From Blastocladiella emersonii ATCC 22665 (lineage: Eukaryota > Fungi > Blastocladiomycota), in contig JANHCV010000013.1 in NCBI GenBank assembly GCA_025594325.1, positions 682,001 to 746,000 of the forward strand: a stretch of DNA of 64,000 nucleotides, read 5' to 3'. This document shows, in pieces, positions 1,992-5,535 of the stretch. The first letter of the stretch is position 1; every line of letters starts with the position of its first letter. Below the pieces are notes generated by a model. It searched no databases, had not been told where the DNA came from, and saw only the letters and a program-made list of their open reading frames with translations. The translations under genes and the position numbers were made by a program.

Positions 1992-4900
1992 ATGTCGTCG
2001 CCGCAGCCCAAGCTCGCCGGCGGCTTGTCCAAGCCCGGCGCCCGCAAGGGCGGGAACCTCAAGTACGTCCACGCCGCCGCCTCCGTCGTCGCGGATCGGG
2101 CGGTCCACTCACCTTTGCGGGATGTGTAGGCCGACGTTCAGCGTCGAGACGAGCGACGTGTCGGGCTCGCGCCTGATCAACGAGCGTTCGCCGCTCGCGT
2201 CGACGGACGATCTCGAGAGCGACGACGACTCGAGCGTTAACGGCCTGTCGCACGGTCCCGCGGGCGGCATGGGCGGCCACGGGCACGGGCACGGCAACGA
2301 CACGGCCAGCGAGGACCGGTCGTCGTCGCGCATCGCGCTCGCCGAGGACTCGGCCACGGCGCAGATCGGCAGCGACGCGACCAAGGATTTTCGCCGCGAT
2401 ATCAACTCCGGGATCAAGGGCATCTTCGAGGGGCTCCGCACTGACCTCAACAAGATGGAGGTCCGCATCAAGGCGGCCATGGTGTCGAGTCTCGAGAAGG
2501 TACGGTCGTGGTGTTGCGCGGGTCGAGGGACGTTGGATCTGACTCGCGTACCGTGTGTGTGTAGGACGAAATGACCTTCTTCGCCAAGCAGGACGAGAAG
2601 GAGCTGCTCCGCCTGCGCGCGCGCCAGGAGCAGGAGATCCAGCGCGAGAAGCGCGCCTTCAAGACGCTCATGGAGTCGCGCGAGGCCCGCCAGCGCGGCC
2701 AGGTCCTCCAGGCCACCATGAACTTTACGGCCAAGAACCGCGATATCATCATCCAGTGCGTGTCGTCGTCGTCCGTGGTCGGTTGACCTGTCACTGACCC
2801 CATGCGCGTGTGTAGGGAGCAGGACAAGGCCCAGTGCATCGACGCCGAGGTCAAGGCCATGCTCGACGACCACCGCCAGGCCTTCGAGGAGTACCTGCAG
2901 CAGGTCGAGGCCCGCCACACCAAGAAGCGCAAGAAGCTCACGGCTGCGTTCGAGCGGTACGCGCCTCTCTCGCTCTCGACGACTCGACTTGCCTCAAACC
3001 TTTCCCCGCTCATCCTTGAGCCACCCACACCACGCCCAAATCTTGGCCATCATCGAACACGATCACTGACCATGATCCTCGCCGACCACGACGTGTAGTA
3101 AGCTCCAGGACAAGCGCACGCTGTTCAACCTCGAGACGGCGCACCTGTCGCCCGAGATGCGTCAGGACCGGATCAAGGATTTCCAGTTCAAGGTGAACCA
3201 CCAGAAGGCCGAGGACAAGAAGGTGGCCGAGCACCGGCGCGACACGCAGTCGCTCGAGATCCGGCAGATGAAGGAGATGTTCGACCTGCAGATCAAGTCG
3301 CTCGAGGAGACGCACACGCTCAAGGCGACCAAGGACCGCGAGATGATGGAGCTGCAGGAGAACCAGCGGCGCGAGGTGCAGCGGTCCAAGGAGGCGATCC
3401 GCGAGGTCGAGTTCCTCGTCAAGGCCGTCAAGCTGCAGCTCGAGCACAACAAGCACATGCGCGACGTGGCGATCCGCCACAAGTCGGCCATCGAGACGGT
3501 CCTGTCGCGCCAGCACCAGCTGCGGTGGGCGCGCATCTCCAAGTGGAAGGTGGTCCTCAAGCGCGAGACCGGGCTCGACGTGACCTTCTTCAACGACCCG
3601 GACCCGGGCGTGCACCTGTCGACGCTGTTCATGGACCCGCAGACCACCATCACGCGGTACCTCGACATCCCGAACCACCGCGCCATCAACCCGGACCCCA
3701 AGTCGCCGCCGATTCCGCTCATGCCCAACATCCTCGAGGGCGTCAACGACGAGGTGGACCCGATCCCGCACCAGATCCTGGGCGAGGGCGAGTCGGGCTA
3801 CTCCAACTCGCCGTCGAGCCCGATCTCGCCGTCGAGCCTGCTCACGTCCAACGAGAAGAACGACCGCGTCGCGCAGGAGGAGAAGGACCGGCTCGAGCAG
3901 AAGCTCGAGCGCATGCGGCTCGACGTCAAGGAGCTCAAGGAGCACCACCGCGCGCAGCTCGAGGCCATGCGCAAGCAGCACGCCGACGAGCTCGGCCGCC
4001 TCGAGTCGACGATCCGCACCCGCGTCAACGAGCTCCGCGAGGCGCAGAAGACGCGCGCGATGCAGCTCAAGAAGCAGCAGGACGACGAGCTCGACCAGCT
4101 CCACGCGACCCAGGAGAAGGAGGCCGCCATGGAGGAGAACATCCGGTCGGCCGAGCACAAGATGCTCATGGAGCGCAAGACGCTCAACTCGGTCCTCGAG
4201 ACGGTCGGCGACGGCATCATCAACATCATGCCCAACGGCGTGCTGACGCGGTTCAACGCGCGCGCCGAGATCATCTTCGGGTACTCGTCGTCCGAGGTGC
4301 TCGGCCGCAACGTGTCGATGCTGCAGCCCGAGAACATTGACCCCATGGACAAGCTCGCGACCTACCTGACCTCTGAGACGTACATGCTCGGCGTCGGGCG
4401 CACCGTCACGGGCCGCAAGCGCGACGGCACCAACTTCCCGCTGCACCTGTCCATCTCCGAGGTCAAGGAGAACGACATGCACCTGTTCACGGCGATCGTG
4501 CGCGACCTGACCGAGGAGGTGGCCGCGCAGGAGGCGGACCGCCGCGAGACGGAGCGCAAGCGCCAGCAGATGGAGACGCTGATCCAGCAGCTCGCGCGCG
4601 AGCGGTCGCGGTCGTCGGATCTCATCCACTCGATGCTGCCGCCGACGATCGCGCCCCGCATGCTGCGCGGCGAGGTGGTCCCGCCCGAGTCGTTCGACGA
4701 CGCGACCATCATGTTCACCGAGATCGAGGGCTTCTCGGAGCTCACCAACACGTTCACGGCGCTCGACATGGTCGACCTGCTCGACACGCTGTACTGCGTC
4801 TTTGACGAGATCATCCTCGGCTACAACGTGTACAAGGTCGAGACCATCGGCGACTCGTACGTGTGCGTGTCGGGCGTGCCCGAGCCGACGGCCGACCACG

Positions 4901-5535
4901 CGTCCGAGATCGCCAAGCTCGCGCTCCACTTCACGCGCGCCATCACCAAGATCCGGATCCGGTCGAACCCGGACCTCGAGCTCAAGCTCAAGGTCGGGAT
5001 CCACTCGGGCCCCGTCGTGGCCGGCGTCGTCGGCAAGAAGTGCTCGCGGTACTGCCTGTTCGGCGACACGGTCAACACGTCGTCGCGCATGAAGTCGACG
5101 GGCGAGCCGAGCCGCATCCACATGTCGGCGGCCGCCCACACGCGCCTGGCCGCCGCCAAGGCCGGGTTCCACCTCGAGCGCCGCGGCGAGGTGCCCGTCA
5201 AGGGCAAGGGCACCATGGAGACGTTCTGGCTCAACGGCCTCGACGGGTTCGAGCCCGACCTCAAGATCATCGACCGCATGATGGAGTCGCAGCGCTCGCT
5301 CGCCGCCTTCGCCAACTCGACCATCGTCGAGCCCGCCGGCGAGGAGCCCCTCCGCCGCAACGACTCGGCGCCCAACGGCGGCGCCGGCAACGGCCGCCCC
5401 GGCATGCTGACCGCGTCCAAGGATATCGGCGCCATGGGCCTCGGCAGCGGCATGGTCGCTCCGCCCTCGCCCTCGAACGGCCAGGCGCAGACGAGCCCGT
5501 TCCGCCGCGCCGTCATGGGCGGCGACCGCGTCTGA
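1992..5535 (+). CDS. Coiled-coil + FixL-like PAS + class III guanylyl cyclase, ~1069 aa; join(1992..2062,2130..2499,2565..2755,2816..2956,3099..5535)
   Basis: Four GT-AG introns (GTACGT, GTACGG, GTGCGT and GTACGC donors; TAG acceptors) splice to 3210 nt in one frame. PAS: SVLETVGDGII...GVGRTVTGRKRDGTNFPLHLSISEV...FTAIVRDLTE. Cyclase motifs KVETIGDSY, GPVVAGVVG, RYCLFGDTVNTSSRM and VKGKGTMETFW; the E and C residues specify GTP. Near-total GC3. Confidence 0.92.

What the first reader, a model, noticed from the sequence alone, without database searches (positions are those of the whole stretch)
4180..4520. Bacterial FixL-like PAS domain wired to a fungal guanylyl cyclase, with the heme-ligand His replaced
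Seen: GVGRTVTGRKRDGTNFPLHLSISEV...FTAIVRDLTE. Established: this closely parallels the heme-PAS of rhizobial FixL O2 sensors (GIGRIVTGKRRDGTTFPMHLSIGEM...FTGFVRDLTE), including the distal-pocket Arg. By hand alignment, the proximal His of FixL (RHDSY) corresponds to PMDKL, so His is replaced by Met and the helix is shorter. Inference: this is either a gas/redox-sensing cGMP source with an altered ligand (Met-heme or another cofactor) or a heme-less PAS derived from one. It is relevant because cGMP and NO signalling control zoospore biology in Blastocladiella.
Basis: partly seen in the sequence, partly recalled or inferred. Interest (0 to 1): 0.75.

Follow-up and report, generated by a model that had tools for sequence, protein, structure and literature searches.

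The report
FixL-type PAS cyclase lacking heme histidine
This water-mould gene (BeGC3) makes the signal molecule cGMP. Its sensor domain clearly descends from the bacterial-type heme oxygen sensor FixL but has lost the histidine that holds the heme, so it probably works as the sensor-less half of a two-part enzyme.

Summary
Window 4183-4515 (+) encodes a PAS domain that matches the FixL heme domain specifically (phmmer E 3e-25; the top 20 Foldseek hits are all FixL). The 26-residue stretch that replaces FixL's Fα helix and FG loop holds no His and is 3 residues shorter.

The gene is BeGC3 (H9P43_009044) of Blastocladiella emersonii. It encodes a soluble 1069-aa protein with a coiled-coil arm, a PAS domain, a signalling helix and a guanylyl cyclase domain.

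This PAS-cyclase family occurs across chytrids, Rozella and Blastocladiomycota, and nearly all members keep the His and the distal Arg. The His is lost in BeGC3, two B. emersonii paralogues, and the Catenaria and B. britannica orthologues. The Met at that place is not conserved (Val in Catenaria), and both basic partners of the heme propionates are gone, so a Met-heme is unlikely. The PAS is still under purifying selection (dN/dS 0.13).

BeGC3's clade has Glu at the first metal-binding Asp. A sister clade, present in every blastoclad species for which a BeGC3-type member turned up, keeps both Asp and the heme His but has lost the catalytic Asn and Arg. I therefore read BeGC3 as the heme-less partner of an sGC-like heterodimer. 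This is inference and was not shown.

The scan found this family before, on paralogues elsewhere in this genome. No paper in the searched library describes the FixL link.

The parts
1992..5535 (+). Gene BeGC3 = H9P43_009044, 1069 aa. Five exons: 1992-2063, 2131-2499, 2565-2756, 2817-2957 and 3100-5535 (stop included), with GT..AG introns.
   Evidence: The annotated protein P0001 maps exactly onto the window. It is 100% identical to the window ORF and is named BeGC3 in PMC9730499.
1992..4182 (+). N-terminal ~619 residues: a Ser/Gly/Asp-rich head, then a charged Glu/Leu/Arg/Lys/Gln-rich arm, presumably coiled coil. No Pfam domain and no transmembrane segment.
   Evidence: Pfam finds nothing. Residues 141-600 are 36% charged, and the maximum 19-residue hydropathy of the whole protein is 1.27. 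dN/dS is 0.32 against Catenaria.
4183..4515 (+). FixL-type PAS domain (residues 620-730).
   Evidence: Pfam PAS_9 and PAS. FixL at E 2.9e-25. AlphaFold2 model with pLDDT 79.5, whose top 20 Foldseek hits are all FixL heme domains. dN/dS is 0.13 against Catenaria.
4324..4401 (+). Remodelled Fα helix and FG loop (residues 667-692). It has no His and is 3 residues shorter than in FixL. The equivalents of His200, Tyr203, Arg206 and His214 are Met, a deletion, Thr and Tyr.
   Evidence: HMMER alignment and family alignments. The modelled helix is 10 residues at pLDDT 53-70, against 17 residues at 88-93 in the His-bearing Allomyces orthologue.
4345..4347 (+). ATG codon for Met674, the residue HMMER aligns with the FixL proximal His200.
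   Evidence: It is not conserved: Val in Catenaria and Glu/Ser in B. britannica.
4399..4401 (+). CGC codon for Arg692, the equivalent of the FixL distal Arg220. It is kept here and is Lys in the Catenaria and B. britannica orthologues.
4516..4701 (+). Signalling helix / coiled-coil linker of 62 residues between PAS and cyclase. It is the only part that weakly matches Pfam HNOBA.
   Evidence: The HNOBA hit scores 22.8 bits, below the 23.4 cut-off, and covers only profile positions 176-215 of 216. 59 of 62 residues are identical to Catenaria, with dN/dS 0.03.
4702..5238 (+). Class III nucleotidyl cyclase catalytic domain with the guanylyl-specific Glu and Cys, and with the catalytic Asn and Arg present.
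   Evidence: Pfam Guanylate_cyc at E 1.3e-60. Residue tables, with residue roles from Table 1 of PMC6005667.
4720..4722 (+). Codon for Glu799, at the position of the first metal-binding Asp.
   Evidence: It is Glu in all ten clade-A rows: nine full-length plus the fragment P0037.
5239..5532 (+). Poorly conserved Gly/Ala/Pro/Ser-rich C-terminal tail.
   Evidence: 27-37% identity to its five closest relatives, and dN/dS about 0.5. No Pfam hit.

Best explanation
BeGC3 is a soluble, dimeric guanylyl cyclase whose sensor domain descends from a FixL-type heme-PAS. It has lost the iron ligand and the propionate anchors, so it most likely no longer holds heme. The PAS fold and the signalling helix remain under strong constraint because they still pair with a partner's PAS and transmit its conformational change to the catalytic domains. 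The catalytic domain supplies the guanine-specifying Glu and Cys and the transition-state Asn and Arg, but has Glu instead of the first metal-binding Asp. A sister clade of PAS-cyclases, represented in B. emersonii by H9P43_002938, 008877 and 010198, has the opposite pattern. It keeps both metal Asp and the heme His and has lost the Asn and Arg. I therefore propose an obligate heterodimer with one competent active site and the heme sensor on the partner, analogous to animal soluble guanylyl cyclase, where only the beta subunit carries heme. Shown: the homology to FixL, the loss of His, the residue patterns, the two clades and the purifying selection. Inferred: absence of heme, heterodimer formation and the gas or redox input.
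For: - FixL-specific homology holds in both sequence and fold.
- There is no His in residues 667-692. The equivalents of His200, Arg206 and His214 are all replaced, and Tyr203 is deleted. Their roles in FixL are described in PMC10765370.
- The Met is not conserved among the five His-less orthologues and paralogues, and Arg220 is already Lys in two of them.
- In 947 related domains the His and Arg are tightly coupled. Arg is present in 644 of 848 domains with His but in only 12 of 101 without it.
- With one and the same set of aligned sequences, AlphaFold2 gives a short, low-confidence helix here and a long, confident one in the His-bearing Allomyces orthologue.
- dN/dS against Catenaria is 0.13 for the PAS, 0.15 for the remodelled segment, 0.03 for the linker and 0.17 for the cyclase.
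- The tree has a blastoclad clade (97%) that splits into A and B. Clade A has 9 rows at 99% support, all with Glu at metal site 1 and with Asn and Arg intact. Clade B has 12 rows at 88% support, all with both Asp, with the Asn changed to A/S/T/L and the Arg to Lys in 10 of 12.
- B. emersonii, Catenaria, Allomyces arbusculus, Coelomomyces and Sorochytrium each have both types.
- The same complementary pattern arose separately in Polychytrium.
Against: - No biochemical data exist, so heme binding, dimer composition and activity are all untested.
- Glu at the metal site is strictly conserved in clade A, whereas the dead Asn position of clade B drifts. The Glu may therefore still bind metal, and BeGC3 may be active as a homodimer.
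- Arg692 (the Arg220 equivalent) and the distal Leu and Ile are kept in BeGC3, which would be unexpected if the pocket were wholly unused.
- The B. emersonii partners keep the His but have lost Arg220 (Ile, Ile, Thr), so what they sense is unclear.
- No RNA data were available to test co-expression.
Confidence: 0.5

Rival explanations
1. BeGC3 is a self-sufficient homodimer. The conserved Glu still coordinates the metal. The heme-less PAS serves only as a dimerisation or relay module, or senses a non-heme signal, and regulation comes through the long N-terminal arm or other proteins.
For: - Glu at metal site 1 is invariant in all ten clade-A rows, which suggests it is functional and not a dead position.
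- All other catalytic residues are canonical.
- Spizellomycete PAS-cyclases have deleted the whole Fα helix yet keep a fully canonical catalytic set. Heme-free homodimeric PAS-cyclases therefore plausibly exist. The deletion lies in uninterrupted coding DNA in Powellomyces.
Against: - The clade-B pattern is exactly complementary (both Asp kept, Asn and Arg lost) in every blastoclad species for which a BeGC3-type member turned up. This is hard to explain unless A and B pair.
- From general knowledge of class III cyclases, not tested here: replacing a metal Asp usually cripples activity.
Confidence: 0.25
2. BeGC3's PAS still binds heme through another ligand (Met674, or one of the conserved Tyr residues of the remodelled segment), or binds a different cofactor, and is itself a gas or redox sensor.
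For: - The distal side is largely intact. Arg692 is kept, and the equivalents of Ile215, Leu236 and Ile238 are Met, Leu and Ile.
- The remodelled segment is conserved among the His-less proteins (73-88% identity to BeGC3 in H9P43_005231, H9P43_002510 and Catenaria), and Tyr at the 207 and 214 positions is kept in nearly all of them.
- dN/dS of the segment is 0.15.
Against: - The Met is not conserved in Catenaria (Val) or B. britannica.
- Both basic propionate partners are lost.
- The PAS domain contains no Cys, and its only His residues (707 and 719) sit at positions also occupied by His in many heme-His-bearing relatives.
- Arg220 is already Lys in two orthologues.
- The modelled helix is short and of low confidence.
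Confidence: 0.12
3. The PAS domain is a decaying relic without function.
For: The key ligand is lost and the helix is shortened.
Against: PAS dN/dS is 0.13, as low as in the catalytic domain. The adjoining signalling helix is 59/62 identical between genera. The His-less form is retained in five genes of three species.
Confidence: 0.03

Closest known systems
FixL heme-PAS oxygen sensor of rhizobia (BjFixL, PDB 1DP6/1DRM/8JS5; SmFixL 1D06)
   Same: The best sequence match (E 2.9e-25, about 40% identity) and the best structural match (target-normalised TM 0.84-0.87). The distal Arg220 equivalent, the distal Leu236 and Ile238, and the flanking motifs are kept.
   Different: No proximal His200. Tyr203 is deleted, and Arg206 and His214 are replaced by Thr and Tyr. 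The Fα/FG segment is 3 residues shorter. The output is a guanylyl cyclase, not a histidine kinase, and the host is a eukaryote.
EcDOS / DosP heme-PAS (PDB 1V9Y, 9CMF)
   Same: The second-best class of matches, also a heme-PAS (E 1.9e-8; Foldseek ranks 21-47). It likewise controls a cyclic-nucleotide enzyme.
   Different: Much more distant. DosP has a His/Met-ligated heme (my recollection, not looked up here) and a phosphodiesterase output. BeGC3 has no Met at the DosP Met95 position by my hand placement, which was not tested.
Animal soluble guanylyl cyclase alpha/beta (GC-1)
   Same: The proposed working principle. It is a heterodimer of paralogous subunits with one competent and one pseudo-symmetric catalytic site. 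Catalytic residues are split between the subunits, only one subunit carries heme, and a coiled-coil signalling helix precedes the cyclase (residue roles from PMC6005667).
   Different: The sensor here is a FixL-type PAS, not H-NOX, and no H-NOX domain is detected. The HNOBA match is sub-threshold and covers only the coiled coil. The split of residues arose independently inside fungi.
His-bearing PAS-guanylyl cyclases of chytrids, Rozella and other Blastocladiomycota (e.g. Batrachochytrium P0015/P0020, Allomyces P0005)
   Same: The same architecture and a clear orthologous family, 45-75% identical over PAS plus cyclase.
   Different: They keep the His200, Tyr203, basic 214 and Arg220 equivalents. 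Most chytrid members also keep all the catalytic residues tabulated.
BeGC1 / RhoGC (rhodopsin-guanylyl cyclase of the same fungus)
   Same: The same organism and the same type of guanylyl-specific catalytic domain and S-helix. Both belong to the published B. emersonii cyclase repertoire.
   Different: BeGC1 has a rhodopsin sensor, is membrane-bound and homodimeric, and has a full catalytic set (Asp457 and the rest).

Membership tests
FixL-type heme-PAS domain | PAS fold with specific sequence similarity to the FixL heme domain | tested here: met
   phmmer E 2.9e-25 to 1DP6. The top 20 Foldseek hits are all FixL.
FixL-type heme-PAS domain | Proximal His on the Fα helix that ligates the heme iron (BjFixL His200) | tested here: not met
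   No His in residues 667-692. Met or a gap sits in that column, while 848 of 947 related domains have His there.
FixL-type heme-PAS domain | Distal Arg that hydrogen-bonds bound O2 (BjFixL Arg220) | tested here: met
   Arg692 aligns with Arg220. It is Lys in the Catenaria and B. britannica orthologues.
FixL-type heme-PAS domain | Basic residues holding the heme propionates (Arg206, His214) | tested here: not met
   They align with Thr and Tyr. The roles of these residues are described in PMC10765370.
FixL-type heme-PAS domain | Actual binding of heme b | not testable with these tools
   Needs expression and spectroscopy.
Class III guanylyl cyclase | Catalytic domain (Pfam PF00211) with the guanine-specifying Glu and Cys | tested here: met
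   PF00211 at E 1.3e-60. Glu and Cys are present at the BeGC1 Glu497 and Cys566 positions.
Class III guanylyl cyclase | Two metal-binding Asp in the same chain, needed for a homodimeric enzyme | tested here: not met
   The first is Glu799 and the second Asp is present.
Class III guanylyl cyclase | Transition-state Asn and Arg | tested here: met
   Both are present.
Soluble guanylyl cyclase (H-NOX / HNOBA type), as implied by the published annotation | H-NOX heme domain and a full HNOBA domain | tested here: not met
   No H-NOX hit. HNOBA scores 22.8 bits, below the 23.4 cut-off, and matches only profile positions 176-215 of 216, which is the coiled coil.
LOV (flavin) PAS domain | Closer similarity to LOV domains than to other PAS types, and the flavin-adduct Cys motif | tested here: not met
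   LOV domains score only E 4e-5 or worse. Where LOV domains carry the adduct Cys, by my hand placement of the motif (recalled from memory, not aligned with a tool), the sequence has Val.

The most novel reading that the evidence does not exclude
Zoosporic fungi possess a so far undescribed class of direct gas-to-cGMP sensors built from a FixL-type heme-PAS and a guanylyl cyclase. In Blastocladiomycota these have evolved into a PAS-based, convergent copy of the animal NO receptor's alpha/beta design. One subunit carries the heme and the metal-binding Asp pair. BeGC3 is the heme-less subunit that supplies the Asn and Arg. This pair could be the heme-dependent cyclase behind the reported NO/cGMP control of zoospore formation.
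Probability: 0.4. Interest if true: 0.8.

Novelty: new variant of a known kind. Interest (0 to 1): 0.6.

Why it matters
The gene is already named BeGC3. It was proposed to be NO-regulated on the strength of an HNOBA annotation (PMC9730499). Here that match is sub-threshold and covers only the coiled coil. The real sensor module is a FixL-type PAS that has lost its heme ligand.

That moves the candidate gas sensor to the His-bearing paralogues and gives a concrete, testable subunit model. More broadly, a conserved FixL-type heme-PAS guanylyl cyclase in chytrids (including Batrachochytrium and Synchytrium), Rozella and blastoclads would be a eukaryotic O2/NO/CO-to-cGMP sensor of a kind not described in the papers I could search.

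It could explain how swimming spores respond to oxygen or NO. It would also offer a natural comparison of heme-bearing and heme-less subunits, parallel to sGC alpha/beta.

Tried and rejected
- RNA evidence: the look-up of sequencing runs listed no RNA run for the gene, so neither expression nor co-expression with B-type paralogues could be examined.
- Literature: searches for FixL + guanylate cyclase + chytrid, for PAS domain + guanylyl cyclase + zoospore + heme, and for BeGC3 found no description of the FixL link. A search aimed at Vieira et al. 2009 (with ODQ) found nothing in the library. I know that work only through its citation in PMC9730499, and my recollection that a heme-directed inhibitor blocked sporulation is unverified.
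- The whole-protein ranking of the exhaustive PAS search was dominated by multi-PAS proteins, so I re-scored single domains locally.
- LOV/flavin reading: considered because of the GRNV..LQ motif. Rejected because LOV hits are about 20 orders of magnitude weaker than FixL and, by my hand placement, the adduct Cys position is Val.
- Recent bacterial transfer into Blastocladiella: rejected because the fusion is shared by several fungal phyla.
- An assembly or annotation artefact as the cause of the 3-residue shortening: rejected because the shortening lies inside one long exon and recurs in four other genes of three species.
- The PAS-only tree has few columns and many unresolved forks, and it is unrooted. 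It cannot decide the ultimate origin of the domain, bacterial or eukaryotic.
Full report
**What is there.** The window comes from Blastocladiella emersonii ATCC 22665. The long + strand ORF at 3157-5535 is the last exon of a five-exon gene (exons 1992-2063, 2131-2499, 2565-2756, 2817-2957 and 3100-5535). Its annotated product, H9P43_009044 (1069 aa), maps exactly onto the window. Leonard et al. 2022 (PMC9730499) identify this locus as BeGC3, one of the guanylyl cyclases first reported by Vieira et al. 2009.

Pfam finds PAS_9/PAS at ORF residues 344-453 and a sub-threshold HNOBA match at 462-501. That match scores 22.8 bits against a cut-off of 23.4 and covers only profile positions 176-215 of 216. 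Guanylate_cyc lies at 509-694 with E 1.3e-60. Nothing is found in the first 620 residues or in the C-terminal tail. The protein has no hydrophobic segment long enough for a membrane span, and residues 141-600 are a charged Glu/Leu/Arg/Lys/Gln-rich arm.

**Checking the observation.** I searched the 152 residues around the finding against all PDB sequences:

| Target | E-value |
|---|---|
| B. japonicum FixL heme domain | 2.9e-25 |
| R. meliloti FixL | 1.8e-18 |
| EcDOS/DosP (also a heme-PAS) | 1.9e-8 |
| LOV and other PAS domains | 4e-5 or worse |

The resemblance is therefore specific to the FixL type and is not the generic PAS S-box similarity.

The Arg of GVGR falls on Arg220, and Met674 falls on His200 with three single-residue gaps.
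- On that alignment Tyr203 is deleted, Arg206 is Thr, His214 is Tyr and Ile215 is Met. Leu236 and Ile238 are unchanged.
- The roles of these FixL residues are summarised in PMC10765370. His200 is the proximal ligand on the Fα helix. Arg220 bonds the bound ligand. Arg206 and His214 hold the propionates. Ile215, Leu236 and Ile238 form the distal wall.
- MAFFT places the gaps a little differently. The safe statement is that the 26-residue Fα/FG segment (residues 667-692, window 4324-4401) has no His and is three residues shorter.
- The PAS domain has no Cys. Its only two His (707 and 719) sit at positions that many His200-bearing relatives also fill with His.

**Structure.** An AlphaFold2 model of residues 606-742, built with a 65-sequence alignment, has mean pLDDT 79.5. 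Confidence dips to 53-70 over the remodelled segment, where the helix is only 10 residues long. Foldseek against the PDB returns FixL heme domains as the top 20 hits (target-normalised TM 0.84-0.87 for the single-domain entries, 37-43% identity). DosP comes next, then LOV. As a control I modelled the closest His-bearing orthologue (Allomyces arbusculus P0005) with the same sequences. It gives pLDDT 88.3 and a 17-residue Fα helix at pLDDT 88-93.

**The family.**
- Homologues with the same PAS-helix-cyclase architecture occur in many genera. Among Blastocladiomycota these are Blastocladiella, Catenaria, Allomyces, Coelomomyces and Sorochytrium.
- Among chytrids they include Batrachochytrium, Synchytrium, Polychytrium, Rhizophlyctis, Entophlyctis and others. 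Rozella also has them.
- In 66 family members, the His200 column is His in all but ten.
- Five exceptions form one 99%-supported subclade: BeGC3, its paralogues H9P43_005231 and H9P43_002510, the Catenaria orthologue P0004 and the B. britannica orthologue P0006. This subclade sits inside the His-bearing Allomyces, Coelomomyces and Sorochytrium lineage.
- The other five are Spizellomycetales-type proteins in which about 21 residues, the whole Fα helix, are missing. In Powellomyces the junction lies in uninterrupted coding DNA, so that deletion is real.
- The loss in BeGC3 is therefore derived, and a second loss happened independently.
- An exhaustive search with the PAS alone found 79,569 proteins at E up to 0.001. 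In the 947 domains of the top 150 proteins, 848 have His at this column and 656 have Arg at the Arg220 column.
- The two residues are strongly coupled. Arg occurs in 644 of 848 His-bearing domains against 12 of 101 without His. Fisher's test gives p = 4e-37, but the sequences are related, so the p-value overstates independence.

**Heme-less or altered ligand?** Within the His-less subclade the residue under His200 is Met in the three B. emersonii genes, Val in Catenaria and Glu/Ser in B. britannica. The Arg220 equivalent is Arg, Arg, Arg, Lys, Lys. A conserved Met-iron bond is thus not supported, and the distal Arg is beginning to drift, as expected once the heme is gone.

The domain is nevertheless not decaying. 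Against Catenaria, Nei-Gojobori dN/dS values are as follows:

| Region | dN/dS |
|---|---|
| PAS | 0.13 |
| Remodelled segment (26 codons, low power) | 0.15 |
| 62-residue signalling helix (59/62 identical) | 0.03 |
| Cyclase | 0.17 |
| N-terminal arm | 0.32 |
| C-terminal tail | 0.53 |

dS is about 1.2, near saturation. The PAS and helix are therefore still doing something that matters.

**The catalytic domain and the heterodimer model.** Residue roles follow Table 1 of PMC6005667. BeGC3 has the guanine-specifying Glu and Cys, the second metal Asp, and the Asn and Arg pair. It has Glu799 in place of the first metal Asp.

The family tree was built with the Fα/FG columns removed. It shows a blastoclad clade (97%) that splits in two:

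| Clade | Rows / support | Metal site | Asn and Arg |
|---|---|---|---|
| A | 9 rows, 99% | Glu at the first site in every row | intact |
| B | 12 rows, 88% | both Asp kept in every row | Asn changed to Ala/Ser/Thr/Leu; Arg changed to Lys in 10 of 12 |

- B. emersonii has three A and three B genes. Catenaria, A. arbusculus, Coelomomyces and Sorochytrium each have both types.
- Most chytrid members keep the full residue set.
- Polychytrium shows an independent A-like/B-like pair: Asn at the metal site in one gene, and Thr/Val/Ala at the Asn position in its three sisters.
- This complementary degeneracy is the signature of obligate heterodimeric class III cyclases such as sGC alpha/beta.
- All B-type proteins keep the heme His. 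The three B. emersonii ones have lost Arg220 (Ile, Ile, Thr).

My reading is that BeGC3 is the heme-less subunit that donates the Asn and Arg, and that it pairs with a heme-bearing subunit that donates the Asp pair. The PAS-PAS pair and the coiled coil would relay the partner's ligand state to the single competent active site. This is inference from sequence patterns. The invariant Glu in clade A leaves room for a self-sufficient homodimer.

**Origin of the PAS.** The best single-domain match outside the fungal family is from the ichthyosporean Chromosphaera perkinsii (111 bits). The best histidine-kinase-type domains reach 95 bits or less. In a PAS-only tree the fungal domains lie with the Chromosphaera and a few environmental sequences. 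They are separated by a 95% branch from a 61-row group of domains, those I checked coming from histidine kinases. The tree is short (115 columns) and unrooted. It argues against a recent bacterial graft into Blastocladiella but cannot settle the ultimate origin.

**Relation to the literature and to the scan.** PMC9730499 infers NO regulation of BeGC3 from an HNOBA annotation and does not mention a PAS or FixL in its main text. In my scan the HNOBA match is sub-threshold and confined to the coiled coil, and no H-NOX domain is present. My searches found no paper linking FixL-type PAS domains to fungal guanylyl cyclases. This is absence in the searched library only. Two earlier follow-ups of this scan, on paralogues elsewhere in the same genome (s1-283544, s1-248137), reached the same family-level reading, a FixL-type PAS cyclase that may be a half-subunit. 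I saw them after I had derived the pattern, and they are not independent evidence.

**Verdict.** It is weak in its Met-heme form and in its implication of a special bacterial graft. The gene is a derived member of a conserved but apparently undescribed fungal family of FixL-type PAS guanylyl cyclases. I class it as a new variant of known kinds, with moderate to high interest that rests mainly on the family and on the sGC-like subunit model.

Noticed in passing
L001:2512-2640 (Powellomyces hirtus P0311); also P0303, P0306, P0309, P0312: PAS-guanylyl cyclases of Powellomyces, Phlyctochytrium, Fimicolochytrium and Borealophlyctis lack about 21 residues, the entire Fα helix that carries the heme His. 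They keep a fully canonical catalytic residue set. This is a second, independent loss of the heme site. In Powellomyces the junction lies in uninterrupted coding DNA.
   Followed up: partly
P0011, P0271, P0272 (B. emersonii H9P43_008877, 010198, 002938; not in this window): The three B-type paralogues keep the heme His and both metal Asp. They have Ile, Ile and Thr at the distal Arg220 position, and Ser/Ala plus Lys at the catalytic Asn and Arg positions. Their tree shape (2938,(8877,10198)) mirrors that of the A-type genes (9044,(5231,2510)), which hints at co-duplicated pairs.
   Followed up: partly
P0287 versus P0026, P0027, P0286 (Polychytrium aggregatum): An independent case of complementary catalytic degeneracy within one chytrid species. 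One gene has Asn at the first metal Asp. Its three sister genes have Thr, Val or Ala at the catalytic Asn position. All keep the heme His and Arg.
   Followed up: no
P0177, P0159 (Chromosphaera perkinsii, Ichthyosporea): A holozoan protist has multi-PAS proteins, with no other Pfam domain detected, whose domains are the closest non-fungal relatives of the fungal cyclase PAS. They carry both the His and the Arg.
   Followed up: partly
P0121-P0155 (about 35 proteins of 1,650-5,500 aa from metagenome and Logan assemblies): Giant proteins with up to 13 matched FixL-type PAS repeats. P0121 also has a TmcB-type TPR region. Their source organisms are unknown.
   Followed up: no
P0270 (1382 aa, cluster of 24 metagenomic members): A multi-PAS protein with a FixL-type PAS (His and Arg present) joined to a class III cyclase. 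The cyclase has Lys and Asp at the base-specifying positions, which is the adenylyl-cyclase pattern. Heme-PAS-cyclase fusions therefore also exist outside fungi.
   Followed up: no
window 4516-4701: The 62-residue helix between PAS and cyclase is the most conserved part of the protein. It is 59/62 identical to Catenaria, with dN/dS 0.03 at dS about 1.3.
   Followed up: yes
window 1992-5535 versus L002 (H9P43_005231): Synonymous divergence between BeGC3 and its paralogue is only about 0.2-0.3. N-terminal-arm dN/dS is high at 0.77. This suggests recent duplication, or gene conversion, with fast change in the arm.
   Followed up: partly
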